A DNA stretch of 13,206 nucleotides from the sequence record MN496305.1. One strand, written 5' to 3'. The notes beneath the pieces are model-generated. The model ran no database searches. It was not told the origin of the DNA and saw only the letters and a program-made list of their open reading frames with translations. How positions within the stretch are numbered: position 1 is the stretch's first letter; each line of letters starts with the position of its first letter. The translations under genes were made by a program, and so were the position numbers. Shown here piece by piece: positions 4,940-10,900 of this stretch.

Positions 4940-5176
4940 TCATGCTTGGGCACCGTTTCTATTGGGTTTCCATATTAGTGTTAGGGGGTAGTCTTGTCTT
5001 TCGCAAGACCCAGTCTCATCCCTTTCGCATAGCATGTACACGAGTTTTGCTATGTTATATGCAGTACTTGGGGATACCTCAAATTGAAAAATAATGTCTT
5101 CAATTGTGATTTGGCCTTTTTTCTTTAAAATTTCATACATGATTTGGGCCTTGTGAAATGTGTTTTGTCTAGGCAT
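4940..5176 (-). CDS. f112: Winged-helix DNA-binding protein, SSV1 F112 homolog (shorter)
   Basis: KAQIMYEILKKKGQITIEDIIFQFEVSPSTAYNI..CER matches F112; ATG 5176 follows a GGGTGA RBS; first gene of the leftward early operon. Confidence 0.85.
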   Translation of the reverse strand: MPRQNTFHKAQIMYEILKKKGQITIEDIIFQFEVSPSTAYNIAKLVYMLCERDETGSCERQDYPLTLIWKPNRNGAQA

Positions 5177-5183
5177 CTTTTCA

Positions 5184-5248
5184 CCCTCTATTCTTCTTCT
5201 ATTCATTCTGAGTTTAAAAGTTTTGCTCTTCTATTCTTCTTCTTTTCA
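5184..5248 (-). promoter_or_regulatory. T5-like early promoter with two pairs of 11-bp tandem operators
   Basis: Minus strand: TGAAAAGAAGA-AGAATAGAAGA, 21-nt spacer containing TTTTAAAC, then TGAATAGAAGA-AGAATAGAGGG; inverted copy of 5870-5934. Confidence 0.85.
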
Positions 5249-5307
5249 TTTTAGTTTCAACCAAGTGAGTATTCCTTATAATATAATTTGTATAATAGGG
5301 GTAAAAG

Positions 5308-5454
5308 ATGGGGTGTCAGAGAGCAGAACTACTGGCCCTTCTTGAGTATATTGAAGAAGAATGCAAAAAGAGAGACTGCATAAGCGTAGTGAGAGAGATA
5401 AAAGAGCGCGTAAAGAAGAACGCAATGCTAGAAGCGATAAACGGGCTGTACTAG
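5308..5454 (+). CDS. b49: SSV1 B49 (Tind transcript) homolog, 48 aa, not in the ORF track
   Basis: MGCQRAELLALLEYIEEECKKRDCISVVREIKERVKKNAMLEAINGLY resembles recalled B49 (MGCAKSEQVILLQYIKTNC..DC..I..EV.RRIMNNAI) and sits between the T5/T6-like promoters. Confidence 0.75.
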   Translation: MGCQRAELLALLEYIEEECKKRDCISVVREIKERVKKNAMLEAINGLY

Positions 5455-5477
5455 GCCAGCTCTTTCTATTCACTTTC

Positions 5478-5507
5478 TATTTTTTCTTTTTTTGTTTTTT
5501 TGTTTTT
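5478..5507 (+). terminator. T-rich terminator of the B49-like transcript
   Basis: Long oligo-T tracts about 25-55 nt after the stop, typical of Sulfolobales terminators. Confidence 0.55.
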
Positions 5508-5552
5508 ACTTCCAACAAAGTAAAAACAAAACTATAAAACAAAGCAATCTAC

Positions 5553-5575
5553 ATTATACAAACTGTTTGTATAAT
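5553..5575. repeat. Perfect 23-bp palindrome, candidate origin or protein-binding site
   Basis: ATTATACAAAC-T-GTTTGTATAAT, within an AT-rich imperfect inverted repeat (~5460-5650). Confidence 0.8.
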
Positions 5576-5610
5576 ATAGTTTGTTTTTGTTATAGTGGGT
5601 CTGTTATTGC

Positions 5611-5634
5611 AAACAAAAAAAAAAAAACAAAAAA
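5611..5634 (-). terminator. T-rich terminator of the F55-like transcript
   Basis: 13-A run plus flanking A tracts on the plus strand = oligo-T on the minus strand, about 20-40 nt after the RHH stop at 5653. Confidence 0.5.
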
Positions 5635-5652
5635 TGAATAGACAGAAAAAAG

Positions 5653-5817
5653 CTATGATTTCGTTAGCTCCTCTATCCTACGCCTCACTGCATCTATTAC
5701 AAACTCTTGTCTGCTAGTGTACCCAGCTTTCCCCATCTTCAAAATTTCATCTATTTGGTCTGCCAATGATTTTGGAATTTTCACCCCTACCCATTCGATT
5801 TTATCTTTTTTAGGCAT
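5653..5817 (-). CDS. f55: Ribbon-helix-helix repressor, positional and structural equivalent of SSV1 F55, 54 aa, not in the ORF track
   Basis: MPKKDKIEWVGVKIPKSLADQIDEILKMGKAGYTSRQEFVIDAVRRRIEELTKS: beta strand VGVKIP, helix, S-R-x-E-F-V..A RHH pattern; GAGGT RBS; leftward gene next to the T6-like promoter, like f55. Confidence 0.75.
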   Translation of the reverse strand: MPKKDKIEWVGVKIPKSLADQIDEILKMGKAGYTSRQEFVIDAVRRRIEELTKS

Positions 5818-5869
5818 CTTCGCTACCTCTTTTATTCTTATAGTATGTTTATCGTTAAAAAAAAGATGT

Positions 5870-5934
5870 TGAATAGAAGTAGAATAGAAGAGTAAAGTTT
5901 AAATATGAGAGTAGAATAGAAGTAGAATAGAGGT
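5870..5934 (+). promoter_or_regulatory. T6-like early promoter with two pairs of 11-bp tandem operators
   Basis: TGAATAGAAGT-AGAATAGAAGA, 21-nt spacer containing TTTAAATA, then AGAATAGAAGT-AGAATAGAGGT, then ATG 5941. Confidence 0.87.
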
Positions 5935-5940
5935 GGCAAA

Positions 5941-6240
5941 ATGGAAACCCCCAAACCCAAATACGAAATTGTTGGGGAAGAAGAAATACATTTTTTTGTA
6001 AGAACGTTGCGTGAAGAAGAACCACCATATGACAAATACATTGAAATAGAATTTGAGAAGCCTTTTGCTGATACTGGCAGATTCTATATTGGCGACATAA
6101 GCGTAGAATCCGTCGAAAGAGAGGTAAAATACATATTACAATTATATAAAATATATAACAAAACAGCTAATGGCGAATTGCAAAATGAAATACGAAAAGA
6201 GATCCTTATAACTTTAGCGAAAATTGCCGGCATGTTGTGA
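5941..6240 (+). CDS. a100: SSV1 A100 homolog
   Basis: PY..YI.I, LYKIY and IRKEILITLAKI match A100 (PY..YLHI, LYEVY, IQKEALLTIAKI); first gene after the T6-like promoter. Confidence 0.75.
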   Translation: METPKPKYEIVGEEEIHFFVRTLREEEPPYDKYIEIEFEKPFADTGRFYIGDISVESVEREVKYILQLYKIYNKTANGELQNEIRKEILITLAKIAGML

Positions 6241-6246
6241 TGCAAG

Positions 6247-6417
6247 ATGAAAGTAGTGACGTTTAAGCTGGAAGATGACTTGTTAAGGATTTTAGACTTA
6301 TACGCTATCAAGACGAAAACGACAAGAAGCGACGTAATTCGCCAAGCATTGATGTTGTTATTGAAGGATGAAATAAACAAAGCGAGAGCGAAAGTCGAAA
6401 CAATCCCGCTGAGGTGA
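6247..6417 (+). CDS. CopG-like ribbon-helix-helix protein (C80-type position), 56 aa, not in the ORF track
   Basis: MKVVTFKLEDDLLRILDLYAIKTKTTRSDVIRQALMLLLKDEINKARAKVETIPLR; classic VTFKL...RSDVIR.AL RHH pattern. Confidence 0.85.
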   Translation: MKVVTFKLEDDLLRILDLYAIKTKTTRSDVIRQALMLLLKDEINKARAKVETIPLR

Positions 6418-7984: not shown

Positions 7985-10900
7985 AGAGAGTATTCCTATT
8001 ATATATAATAGGTATATTACTCACATTATTCCTTCCTCTGATTCAAACACAAAGTGCTGTATCGCTTCCACCACTATACGTAGAGGATGCAGTGAACGCT
8101 GAGATACAACAGCTCTGGTCTAAGAGCCCTACTGGTGTTTATGCTTTCCATGAGGCACCTAGCGTGAACAATAGTTTCTGGCCTGATGATAATGCAAAAT
8201 TCTTAGAATCGATAGCACCTTGGTGGCAAAGCTATTCTTCTTACGTAAATTCAACACTACAATTCCTTCAACAAAGCGATGTAAATGGACTCTTTATCAA
8301 GAGATTTGAATACCCCTTGAATCCACTCCAATCAATAACAATCGGCAATTTATCAGGGTACACTAACGGATTCTACGATATTGTTGGTAATCCTTTACTG
8401 AACAGTATGAGGATTGCGACATACTATAACCCAACATTAGCTGTGACTTATCTATTTGGAAATGTAGTCCAGTATCCAAATGGAATATTAGTGAATATTG
8501 AACAAGGATTAGAAAACCCAATCACAGATGGTGGATTTGGCGGGACCGGTGGGCAAAATCCACCTTGGGAGTCCCTGAACTCTTCGTCACTTGTAAATGA
8601 TTCGATTGTTAGTATAGTCAATAACGCAAAAACATATCTGAATTTAACTGGACCTACGTTCTTTGGAACTCCTAGTGAGGAATTGCAATACAATTTCCCA
8701 ATTGTCAATGTCCTTCCTCATTATTTGGCGTTTCAGAATGTAAACGGAATTCTAGGACAATATAATTATCAAGGTAAATTCATCCCATTCAACGTAACAC
8801 TTGTACTTCAATCTAGCTCAATCAATAGGATTTACTTAGAATTCATTTGGGAAAACAGTACAAGTGGTACTTACGTGCTGACAGATATACCAGTATACTT
8901 TACAGCAAATGGGCAATGGCAACAAGTTGTAGTCACAGTCCCCGCTAGTGCATGGCCCAAATATTGGAATTTAGGGGCATTGTCCGCTGTGCCATTGCTG
9001 ATAGGAATAGGTCTCGATTTACCTGGCAGTAGTCCTTCGCAGACTGGACCTACTGGAGTTTATGTAGGCGATATAGCAACAAATTATCCCACTACTTTCG
9101 GTCCGCAGTTTAATGTGACAAATAAAGGAAGTTATGTAGTGTTTAACGAGAGTTGGAAGAGTGATTCTTTAGGTGCCACATTTTGGATAGCGTATGTTCT
9201 GGGCCAAGGCAATGCGATTGAAGTATTAGCGTCAGCCCCAGTAAATCAGTCTTGGATTTATGTTGGGTACAATGGTCTGGCGACAATAGGTACTGGATAC
9301 ACTATTCTTGAGACCCCATCAGGAATTCTGAAGAATTACCAGAACAGTGGCAACATTAGCTGGACTTATTTAGGTCCAAATTTTGGAAAATGGATGCTGT
9401 TATCAACCAATTACGCACCAAACTGGATTGGTGATTTCCAGATGCTCTTCATCTTTCCAATGGCAGGAACTTCTAATCCATATATGGATACATTAAACAA
9501 CGCTGTTTACATGGGTGATCCAACAGAGGTTAGGAACACTTTGTACTTTGGGAATTACACTACTTTGCCGGGATACTTCCAATGGGTCCAAATTGCTTAC
9601 CAAAATGATGGCAACACATCTGGAGTCTTTGGGTTCTTCTTGATACCTAGCGTAGATTACTTGGTGAATCCATCAGTGATAGTTAACGACATGTTTCCAT
9701 CTAGCTTAACAGCATACAGCCCGTCTTCAATACCAAACTATTGGTGGGAGGCAGTTTGGGGCGAGAATTATTATGAAGGCGAAATAATCTATGCTTTAGC
9801 ATTATTGGGCAAATACGGGAATTCGCAAGCATTGCAAATGGCCCAACAGGCATGGCTATCTTATTATAATCAATTGAAAGCGTATAATGGGGCAACTTAC
9901 ACATCTTCATTAGCGCGATTTATTATGGCAACAATACTGTTATACAATATAACGGGAAACACACAGTACAGCAATGCGTATACACAATTGGCAAACTGGC
10001 TTCTTCAATATCAGAATCAATCGAAATACGCCTATGTTTACATCCCCATGTGGTATCACAAAGATGTTGATGTTCCCTCTGTGAATGGTTTTGCAACATA
10101 CGGATACATCATCAATAGAACTGCACAAATGGATGTGGGTACTGTCATATCTGGAACATCAATTGGGCTGAACTTCTTTGAAGACATTCCGCTAAATACA
10201 TCATATGGAATATATTTGTTAACTAATGGAACTGGAAAATTACCATTCACATATCAGAATGTATTGAATGTAAGCGGAACATTCATAACATATTTATACA
10301 TGAATGGAGGAGGCACTGCAACTACGGCTAACATCACTATAACTGTTCAGATAGCGTATAATGGAAATGTACTACAGACAATAGGAACAGCAGCTGTAGA
10401 CAATGTTCCAATTCAGCCCGGAGGGATCAGCGGTTCCCCACCATTCTATCCAGTCAAGATTGTAGTGCCAGTACTAACTACAGTTAATGCCCCACCGGGC
10501 TCTACATTAATCATAGGCTGGAATATCAAAGCCCCGCAAACCGTGTACGTCTTAATCGATAGTACAAATGGACCTTCTAATGTGACAATTCCATTATCAT
10601 GGCCAAATCCATTCTATGGTTTATTCACCATTCCCAAAATCTACAATCCGAATCCGGGAGTCCACAATTATCCACAGCCATACTTCTTAGATATAAGTGC
10701 AATGGCTGGGCAAGCTATGATGGCACTATACGCAGTCACTAAGAATATTACATATTTACTTGACGCCCAACTGGTGATGAATGCCATTCACTATGGACCA
10801 GTGCCTATGCCAACATATGGGATACTAGGAGTGCCTAATCCGCCAGTAGAACCTAGGCTATGGGTTTATGCGAATTACTCAACAGTTGATGCAGATTACT

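What the first reader, a model, noticed from the sequence alone, without database searches (positions are those of the whole stretch)
5184..5934. The whole control region has near two-fold symmetry about one point
The two 65-bp promoter/operator blocks (5184-5248 and 5870-5934) are inverted copies with midpoint 5559. The perfect palindrome is centred at 5564. The two convergent small genes start 256 nt (5308) and 253 nt (5817) from that centre and both end in oligo-T tracts facing it. This mirror layout suggests an ancient inverted duplication, or selection for a symmetric looped nucleoprotein structure coupling bidirectional early transcription to a central origin.
Basis: partly seen in the sequence, partly recalled or inferred. 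Interest (0 to 1): 0.65.

Follow-up and report, generated by a model that had tools for sequence, protein, structure and literature searches.

The report
Mirror-image early switch of fusellovirus SSV19
The near two-fold symmetry is real, but it is the SSV19 copy of the known SSV1 lysogeny/UV-induction switch, and relatives conserve the mirror plan rather than the exact distances.

Summary
The window is the complete genome of Sulfolobus spindle-shaped virus SSV19 (MN496305.1). In detail: four pairs of 11-bp operator boxes mirror exactly about 5559. A further box pair and the two stop codons mirror about 5553.5, the two ATGs about 5562.5, and a perfect 23-nt palindrome sits at 5564.

The region is homologous to the SSV1 T5 / Tind(B49) / Tlys(F55) / T6 switch. 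F55 is 65% identical and B49 55% identical to the SSV1 proteins. Two reviews call both proteins unique to SSV1. GenBank does not annotate b49 in SSV19.

I compared eight f55-bearing loci: SSV19, SSV20, SSV1 and five environmental contigs.
- Gene order and box polarity are conserved in all eight.
- In 7 of 8 the region between the two stop codons is a large imperfect palindrome centred within 4.5 bp of its midpoint.
- The block-to-block span varies from 698 to 944 bp with no conserved helical phase.
- SSV1 itself is about 35-47 bp off-centre.
- The centre sequence is replaced in SSV20 and inverted between relatives.
- The SSV19 palindrome is an inverted doubling of an 11-mer that is single-copy at the centre of SSV1-type loci.

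The most likely reading is two mirrored promoter-operator modules driving two convergent small genes. A central origin or an F55 loop remains untested.

The parts
4940..5176 (-). First gene of the leftward early (T5-like) operon, F-112 family winged-helix protein. The true start is most likely ATG 5176, not the annotated 5206.
   Evidence: Pfam F-112 PF09645 E 5e-16, with the match starting at residue 15 of the long form. GGTGA lies 7 nt before ATG 5176. The SSV20 homologue is annotated from the equivalent ATG. 5206 falls between the TATA box and the predicted transcription start.
5184..5250 (-). T5-side promoter-operator block: 11-bp boxes at 5186-5196, 5197-5207, 5229-5239 and 5240-5250 (the last degenerate), flanking a TATA-like element at 5213-5220.
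   Evidence: Same geometry (11/32/11) as the right block. Homologous in plan to the SSV1 T5 promoter with its F55 sites (PMC5569661).
5251..5307 (+). Inner promoter region of the Tind-like transcript (AT-rich, TATA-like 5274-5285). Contains a 10/11 copy of the central 11-mer at 5286-5296.
   Evidence: sequence only; the transcription start is not mapped in SSV19.
5308..5454 (+). B49 homologue (48 aa). Not annotated in MN496305.1, which lists the overlapping frame 5361-5537 instead.
   Evidence: 55% identity to SSV1 B-49, E 7e-17. Conserved in 7 loci with three invariant Cys. Predicted two-helix hairpin, pLDDT 78. The annotated frame runs into the oligo-T tract.
5464..5507 (+). 3' module of b49: tandem operator-like boxes (5464-5474, 5475-5485) starting 10 nt after the stop codon, then an oligo-T tract at 5480-5507 (predicted archaeal terminator).
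   Evidence: Oligo(dT) termination of Tind/Tlys in SSV1: preprint 10.64898/2026.06.17.732947.
5541..5587 (.). Central palindrome: perfect 23 nt at 5553-5575 centred on 5564, imperfect arms 5541-5563 / 5565-5587. It is an inverted doubling of the 11-mer GTTTGTATAAT (plus G in most loci), which is single-copy at the centre of SSV1, L009, L010 and L011.
   Evidence: A 49-nt stretch here (5517-5564) is one of only three stretches of the whole region that blastn aligns between SSV19 and SSV1.
5611..5642 (-). 3' module of f55: an operator-like box at 5636-5642, 10 nt after the stop codon, then an oligo-T tract on the - strand (5611-5634).
   Evidence: A box just after the f55 stop is present in all 8 loci.
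5653..5817 (-). F55 homologue (54 aa), a ribbon-helix-helix repressor (Tlys-like gene).
   Evidence: 65% identity to the unannotated SSV1 f55 ORF, E 1e-23. Weak Pfam RHH_1 match. Model has an extended N-terminus plus two helices, pLDDT 82.
5818..5869 (-). Inner promoter and 5'UTR of the Tlys-like transcript, with GAGGT 8 nt before the ATG.
   Evidence: sequence only.
5868..5934 (+). T6-side promoter-operator block: boxes at 5868-5878, 5879-5889, 5911-5921 and 5922-5932, flanking a BRE/TATA at about 5892-5905.
   Evidence: Close to the Sulfolobales BRE/TATA consensus quoted in the preprint. Counterpart of the SSV1 'direct repeat 1' copies around T6 box A.
5941..6240 (+). First gene of the rightward early (T6-like) operon, A-100/DUF5517 family. 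Not annotated in MN496305.1, which lists 5838-6041 on the - strand instead.
   Evidence: 28% identity to SSV1 A-100, E 6e-8. DUF5517 E 2.5e-5, below the curated cut-off. 81% identical to the annotated SSV20 homologue.

Best explanation
This is the SSV19 version of the SSV1-type lysogeny/induction switch. Its symmetry comes from the way it is built.

Construction. One promoter-operator module of about 135 bp is present twice, in inverted orientation. Each copy holds four 11-bp direct-repeat boxes: two overlap the BRE side and two overlap the start-site side of an outward-firing early promoter (T5-like to the left, T6-like to the right). Each copy also holds an inward-firing promoter 53-60 bp further in.

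Inward transcripts. The inward promoters drive two unrelated small genes of nearly equal size, b49 (147 nt) and f55 (165 nt). These converge on opposed oligo-T terminators.

Inferred mechanism, taken from SSV1. F55 dimers bind the tandem boxes cooperatively and occlude both early promoters and their own neighbourhood during the carrier state. Loss of F55 after DNA damage releases first Tind and then T5/T6.

Why the centres coincide. Equal modules plus nearly equal genes place every midpoint within a few bp of 5559. Nothing requires selection on the exact distances.

The AT-rich centre. It has 24% GC and is bracketed by extra boxes in mirror orientation. It behaves as an exchangeable and invertible palindromic cassette, and it carries a conserved 11-mer. 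Its role, whether bidirectional terminator, origin or both, is not established.
For: Identity. The window is SSV19 at 100%. F55, B49, F-112 and A-100 homologues sit in the SSV1 order and orientation.

Boxes. They are strongly enriched and strictly polar. They flank the TATA elements as the SSV1 'direct repeat 1' copies flank T6 box A and its start site. F55 binding to such tandem 11-mers at T5, T6, Tind and Tlys is published (PMC9608457, PMC5569661).

Module similarity. 99 identities over 129-137 nt.

Geometry is not conserved. Spans are 745, 835, 814, 944, 702, 790, 708 and 698 bp. SSV1 is off by 35-47 bp.

The centre is replaceable. In SSV20 the flanks are near-identical but the centre is unalignable and 90 bp longer. 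It is also invertible: L009 against L010 gives 85.8% over 155 nt in inverted orientation, E 1e-49, with collinear flanks. L009 and L011 are sisters on the tree, which implies one inversion event.

Repressor and operator changed together. SSV19/SSV20 boxes have core TCTATTC and F55 beta-strand residues W9/G11/K13. The six SSV1-type loci have core CTCTATCT and Y/T/S at those positions.

SSV1 transcript ends. The 3' ends of Tind and Tlys overlap in a low-GC, palindrome-rich bidirectional terminator (preprint 10.64898/2026.06.17.732947).

SSV21. It carries a different cassette with a third box type, again mirrored at T5/T6, and its inner genes are not convergent.
Against: No binding, transcript or replication data exist for SSV19, and no RNA run was listed.

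The intergenic centre is a strong palindromic structure centred on its midpoint in 7 of 8 loci, despite complete sequence turnover and lengths of 160-391 bp. The extra boxes sit exactly 10 nt after both stop codons in SSV19. This is more order than two independent terminators need, and it hints at a constraint or a homogenising process acting on the centre itself.

The repressor/operator co-variation rests on a single evolutionary split.
Confidence: 0.62

Rival explanations
1. The symmetry is selected. F55 oligomers bound to the two outer blocks and to the inner bracket boxes bridge the DNA into a symmetric loop, in the manner of lambda CI at OL-OR. The palindromic centre is the replication origin, so early transcription and origin firing are repressed and released together.
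For: Mirror polarity of all boxes in 8 of 8 loci. Bracket boxes just after both stop codons in all loci. The inverted-repeat centre lies within 4.5 bp of the intergenic midpoint in 7 of 8 loci and within 7.5 bp of the outer-block centre in 6 of 8. A conserved 11-mer sits at the centre in 5 of 8 loci. This is the lowest-GC part of the genome. The Tind-Tlys region has long been hypothesised to hold the SSV1 origin.
Against: The span is variable with no common helical phase. SSV1, the only tested virus, is off-centre. The centre is swapped for unrelated sequence in SSV20, L008 and L012. b49 and f55 deletions leave SSV1 infectious, and deletions in the Tind region are tolerated (PMC9608457). No SSV origin has been mapped (PMC6080066). 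F55 bridging has never been reported.
Confidence: 0.18
2. The symmetry is a by-product of DNA dynamics. The inverted box clusters recombine with each other. This flips the central segment and homogenises the two arms by gene conversion, so the region stays palindromic while its sequence turns over. The SSV19 palindrome is a footprint of such an event.
For: There is a documented inversion whose end points fall in the inverted box clusters, and it is a single event on the tree. Nested inverted repeats of unrelated sequence occur in L008 (poly-C/poly-G) and SSV20 (CACA and GTCTGACAGAC repeats). The 11-mer is single in SSV1-type loci, occurs in either orientation, and is doubled head-to-head in SSV19.
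Against: Only one inversion is seen among eight loci. Recombination explains how the arms are maintained, not why boxes sit there in the first place. This reading is compatible with the best explanation and does not replace it.
Confidence: 0.15
3. The apparent symmetry is chance in AT-rich, low-complexity DNA.
For: The region is AT-rich (32% GC; centre 24%). T and A runs generate many weak inverted matches.
Against: For the 7-mer count, 0 of 200 shuffles reach the observed value, and polarity is perfect. Inverted-repeat scores are 25-74 against at most 6 in shuffles. The plan is conserved in eight loci.
Confidence: 0.02

Closest known systems
SSV1 early control region (T5 / Tind-B49 / Tlys-F55 / T6), the F55 lysogeny-UV induction switch
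   Same: Same four transcription units in the same order and orientation. Homologous F55 (65%), B49 (55%), F-112 and A-100. Tandem 11-bp direct-repeat boxes on both sides of the T5 and T6 TATA boxes. A box just after the f55 stop. Convergent oligo-T terminators. An AT-rich, palindrome-rich centre holding the same 11-mer.
   Different: The box sequence differs (core TCTATTC against CTCTATCT), with matching changes in the F55 beta-strand. Unit spacing is 43 bp against 39-41 bp. The Tind-like ATG is 60 bp from the T5 block in SSV19 and 143 bp in SSV1, so SSV19 is symmetric and SSV1 is not. The central 11-mer is doubled into a perfect palindrome. No experimental data exist for SSV19.
Ribbon-helix-helix repressors that bind arrays of short repeats cooperatively (MetJ on tandem met-boxes, omega of pSM19035 on heptad arrays, Arc/Mnt, CopG). 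This comparison rests on my own knowledge of these families, not on a test here.
   Same: A small RHH protein and short repeats spaced about one helical turn apart that overlap promoter elements. Specificity is expected to lie in alternate beta-strand residues.
   Different: This is an archaeal promoter (TBP/TFB), with two units placed on either side of the TATA box. The oligomeric state of F55 on DNA is not known here.
Lambda immunity region (CI, OR/OL) and lambdoid immunity cassettes. Analogy drawn in PMC5569661.
   Same: One repressor holds divergent early promoters off and regulates itself. Release follows DNA damage. Repressor and operators co-vary as an exchangeable cassette: SSV19/20, SSV1-type and SSV21 carry three box types.
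   Different: The proteins are unrelated, the boxes are direct rather than palindromic, and the repressor gene lies between convergent rather than divergent inner units. Long-range looping has not been shown.
Polyomavirus (SV40) core origin between divergent early and late promoters. Analogy from my own knowledge.
   Same: A central palindrome with flanking A/T tracts, bracketed by repeated binding sites in mirror orientation, lying between divergent transcription units.
   Different: No initiator is known to bind here and origin function is untested. The bracket sites resemble repressor boxes, not initiator sites.

Membership tests
SSV1-type F55 switch | F55-family ribbon-helix-helix protein encoded between the T5 and T6 promoters | tested here: met
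   65% identity, E 1e-23 to SSV1 F55. Model consistent with RHH. Pfam RHH_1 match only weak, E 0.026.
SSV1-type F55 switch | B49 gene convergent with f55 | tested here: met
   55% identity, E 7e-17. Convergent orientation in all 8 loci.
SSV1-type F55 switch | Two pairs of tandem 11-bp direct repeats flanking the TATA box of both divergent early promoters | tested here: met
   Boxes at 5186-5250 and 5868-5932, spacing 11/32/11. Counterpart repeats in SSV1.
SSV1-type F55 switch | F55 binds these boxes and represses T5, T6, Tind and Tlys | not testable with these tools
   Published for SSV1 only (PMC9608457, PMC5569661). The SSV19 boxes differ in 4-5 of 11 positions.
SSV1-type F55 switch | UV or DNA-damage inducibility | not testable with these tools
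   No RNA runs were listed. The SSV19 description paper is not held.
Replication origin | AT-rich unwinding region with repeated or palindromic elements | tested here: met
   Centre 24% GC. Perfect 23-nt palindrome, hairpin z -4.1. These features are necessary, not sufficient.
Replication origin | Initiation of replication or ARS activity mapped to the element | not testable with these tools
   No SSV origin has been functionally characterised (PMC6080066).
Inverted duplication of a whole gene-plus-promoter unit | Homology of the two small genes and of the two outer genes | tested here: not met
   No alignment between F55 and B49. Different predicted secondary structures. The outer genes belong to different families.
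Inverted duplication of the regulatory module only | Similarity beyond the shared binding sites | tested here: inconclusive
   99 identities over 129-137 nt. The inner-promoter part scores above 495 of 500 shuffles. Functional constraint (boxes, TATA, Shine-Dalgarno-like motif, ATG) could also produce this.
Spacing-constrained symmetric nucleoprotein complex | Conserved distance or helical phase between the mirrored blocks in relatives | tested here: not met
   Spans 698-944 bp. Their remainders on a 10.5-bp helical repeat are spread from 0.24 to 0.95 of a turn, computed by hand from the spans. SSV1 is asymmetric by about 95 bp between the two inner ATG offsets.

The most novel reading that the evidence does not exclude
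The centre is the fuselloviral replication origin, built as an exchangeable and invertible palindromic cassette and bracketed by mirror-oriented F55 boxes. One small repressor would then gate both divergent early transcription and origin firing. The palindromic frame would be conserved while its sequence turns over. The conserved GTTTGTATAAT element would be the initiator or unwinding core, doubled in SSV19.
Probability: 0.18. Interest if true: 0.65.

Novelty: new member of a known kind. Interest (0 to 1): 0.38.

Why it matters
F55 is the best-understood regulator of any archaeal virus. Reviews from 2018 and 2022 state that F55, B49 and the Tlys promoter are unique to SSV1 (PMC6080066, PMC9608457).

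This work shows the complete switch in SSV19 and SSV20, both cultivable viruses, and in five environmental contigs. SSV19/20 carry a second operator/repressor specificity. That gives a natural comparison set for three questions:
- how the repressor reads its boxes;
- which features of the layout matter;
- whether the palindromic centre is the long-sought fusellovirus origin.

The symmetry itself is mostly explained by the construction of the region, so the finding refines known biology and does not add a new kind of system.

Tried and rejected
- Single-protein scans for F55 relatives in viral and genome contigs found nothing. An alignment query was needed.
- The word-based protein search returned only F55's own cluster. 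Its other members are two SSV19 proviral copies in the host chromosome CP045706.1. They differ from the virus only in homopolymer lengths, so they are not independent evidence.
- L013 is an unrelated 90-aa RHH protein next to a 168-aa ORF that I did not scan against families. It was excluded.
- A 15-mer scan of viral contigs for the central element gave only unrelated-looking hits, which I did not inspect. It is uninformative.
- blastn of the SSV1 centre against the phage records found only SSV1.
- No sequencing run was listed for this DNA.
- The primary papers were not held: Fusco 2013 and 2015, Iverson 2017, Zhang 2020. I therefore cannot say whether Zhang et al. already noted the F55 homologue, or whether Fusco et al. 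tested the intergenic boxes.
- GC skew changes sign near here, but it follows the coding strand and was not used as origin evidence.
- Complex prediction was not used, because no protein-protein contact is claimed.

Full report
**What the window is**

The 13,206-bp window is the complete circular genome of Sulfolobus spindle-shaped virus SSV19 (MN496305.1, host Sulfolobus sp. E11-6), matched at 100%.

**The observation**

- The two 65-bp blocks are inverted copies: 47/65 identical without gaps, 53/65 with two 1-nt gaps.
- I scanned every candidate centre between 5500 and 5620 for complementarity over 5150-5960. The best is 5559.0 at 43.6%; the next best is 37.9%.
- The blocks are built from 11-bp boxes with core GAATAGA. 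That 7-mer occurs 10 times in the genome against 2.4 +/- 1.6 expected, and 0 of 200 shuffles reach 10.
- Nine of the ten copies lie in 5187-5931. All copies left of the centre are on the - strand and all right of it on the + strand.
- Four box pairs share the centre 5559 exactly.
- The 23-nt palindrome at 5553-5575, centred on 5564, is perfect and the longest in the genome. Its extended form folds as a hairpin with z = -4.1.

I add two mirror pairs.
- A box lies exactly 10 nt after each of the two stop codons (5465-5471 and 5636-5642; centre 5553.5).
- The real start codons of the two outer genes, 5176 and 5941, have midpoint 5558.5.

**What it is**

- The - strand ORF 5653-5817 is 65% identical to the unannotated f55 ORF of SSV1.
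- The + strand ORF 5308-5454 is 55% identical to SSV1 B-49 (E 7e-17).
- The leftward operon starts with an F-112 family gene. The rightward operon starts with an A-100/DUF5517 homologue.
- Order and orientation match the annotated SSV1 map: T5 leftward, Tind/B49 rightward, f55 leftward, T6 rightward, with 'direct repeat 1' copies on both sides of T6 box A.

In SSV1, F55 is a dimeric ribbon-helix-helix repressor. It binds tandem 11-mers (consensus ATAGATAGAGT) at the T5, T6, Tind and Tlys promoters, overlapping BRE and start site. It leaves them in order of affinity after UV (PMC9608457, PMC5569661).

The AlphaFold model of the SSV19 protein has an extended N-terminus plus two helices (pLDDT 82). 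That is the RHH pattern for a monomer.

**Comparison with relatives**

An alignment-based scan recovered SSV1 again plus five further f55 loci: L008 from IMG/VR and L009-L012 from metagenomes. With SSV20 this makes eight loci.

Conserved in all eight:
- f55 and b49 converge, flanked by F-112 on the b49 side.
- T6-side boxes and boxes just after the f55 stop lie in one orientation.
- Boxes just before the b49 stop and T5-side boxes lie in the opposite orientation.

Within the intergenic centre, the dominant inverted-repeat centre lies within 4.5 bp of the midpoint between the two stop codons in 7 of 8 loci. Scores are 25-74 against at most 6 in shuffles. It lies within 7.5 bp of the outer-block centre in 6 of 8.

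The distances themselves are not conserved.
- Block-to-block spans are 745, 835, 814, 944, 702, 790, 708 and 698 bp. Their remainders on a 10.5-bp helical repeat are scattered.
- In SSV1, the F55 ATG is 297 bp and the B49 ATG 202 bp from the block centre.

**The centre turns over**

- SSV19 and SSV20 are near-identical from each block to the end of each small gene. Between the genes, SSV20 has 288 bp of unrelated repeats in place of SSV19's 198 bp.
- L008 and L012 carry a GTGTTAACAC doublet instead.
- An 11-mer, GTTTGTATAAT, sits at the centre of SSV1, L009, L010 and L011 as a single copy in either orientation. In SSV19 it appears as the two arms of the palindrome.
- Besides part of f55 and the T6 block, this central stretch is the only part of the region that blastn aligns between SSV19 and SSV1.
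- The whole central segment of L009 aligns to L010 in inverted orientation (85.8% over 155 nt, E 1e-49) while the flanks are collinear. L009 and L011 share this orientation and are sisters on a tree of the flanks, which implies a single inversion.

**Repressor and operator changed together**

- SSV19 and SSV20 use boxes of the form YTCTATTCWWY. Their F55 beta-strand has W9, G11 and K13.
- The six SSV1-type loci use CTCTATCTATA with Y, T and S at those positions. The alternating hydrophobic residues are essentially unchanged (V10 is T in one locus).
- SSV21, a sibling of SSV20, has a different cassette. It has two same-strand genes and a third box type (GATTGATAG), again mirrored at the T5 and T6 promoters.

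The control region therefore behaves like an exchangeable immunity cassette. Mirrored operators at the divergent early promoters are a general feature. The full two-fold layout belongs to the f55/b49 cassette.

**Was it an inverted duplication?**

- The regulatory modules are alike. 5174-5310 against the reverse complement of 5815-5943 gives 99 identities over 129-137 nt, reaching from one start codon to the other. The inner-promoter part scores above 495 of 500 shuffles.
- The genes are not alike. F55 and B49 give no alignment. B49 is predicted as a two-helix hairpin with three invariant cysteines.

**Mechanism**

Shown here: homology, box enrichment and polarity, geometry, and comparative variation.

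Inferred from SSV1: F55 occupies the boxes and blocks TFB/TBP and polymerase at T5 and T6, and the inner transcripts end in opposed oligo-T tracts. For SSV1, a 2026 preprint reports overlapping Tind and Tlys 3' ends in a low-GC, palindrome-rich bidirectional terminator. The authors recall the old hypothesis that the origin lies there.

The coincidence of midpoints in SSV19 follows from two equal modules (inner ATG 60 and 53 bp from the blocks) and two genes of 147 and 165 nt.

What this does not fully explain is why the centre stays palindromic about its midpoint through complete sequence replacement. Candidate reasons are recombination and gene conversion between the inverted box clusters, or a function such as an origin.

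**Literature position**

The symmetric plan is implicit in the published SSV1 maps. Two reviews state that F55, B49 and the Tlys promoter are unique to SSV1 (PMC6080066; PMC9608457). GenBank does not annotate b49 in SSV19 or SSV20. The SSV19 description paper was not available to me.

First-stage notes of this scan on the same window (s1-165233, s1-165580, s1-166713) describe the switch, the palindrome and the bracket boxes. I reached the same points independently, before that look-up.

**Verdict**

- This is a new member of a known kind. Its useful comparative additions are a second operator specificity, a conserved central 11-mer, and an invertible and replaceable centre.

Noticed in passing
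window 5308-5454 (+), 5361-5537 (+), 5838-6041 (-), 5941-6240 (+), 5176/5206 (-): The GenBank annotation of SSV19 looks wrong in the control region. The b49 homologue and the A-100-like first T6 gene are not annotated. Two probably spurious ORFs are listed instead: 5361-5537, which runs into the oligo-T tract, and 5838-6041 on the - strand. The F-112 homologue most likely starts at 5176, not 5206.
   Followed up: yes
L004 and L006 (CP045706.1 2520436-2526600 and 1-5468): The 2.55-Mb chromosome record CP045706.1 holds SSV19 sequence at two places. They differ from the virus record in this region only in homopolymer lengths. L004 is flanked by an ABC-transporter permease gene (MacB/FtsX).
   Followed up: partly
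L014 (SSV21, MN496307.1) 880-1560: SSV21 has a different cassette between the T5 and T6 promoters: two same-strand small genes, no f55 or b49, and a third operator type (GATTGATAG repeats) mirrored at both promoters. Similarity to SSV19 resumes inside the T6 block.
   Followed up: partly
window 5308-5454; alignment A2: B49 is conserved as a protein in seven loci with three invariant cysteines (C3, C19, C24) and a predicted two-helix hairpin. This argues that Tind is translated, which the 2022 review doubts.
   Followed up: partly
window 6247-6417 (+): A second small ribbon-helix-helix gene lies in the T6-like operon (Pfam RHH_1, E 5e-9). By the 2022 review it is probably the C80/aCcr1-like regulator of SSV19-22.
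   Followed up: no
window 7995-8012: The only other perfect palindrome with arms of 9 nt or more in the genome (CCTATTATATATAATAGG) lies just inside the start of the 1236-aa tail-spike ORF.
   Followed up: no
L008 2724-2733 and 2995-3010: One environmental f55 locus has a poly-C run and a poly-G run placed as mirror images about the intergenic midpoint. They lie inside nested inverted box clusters.
   Followed up: no
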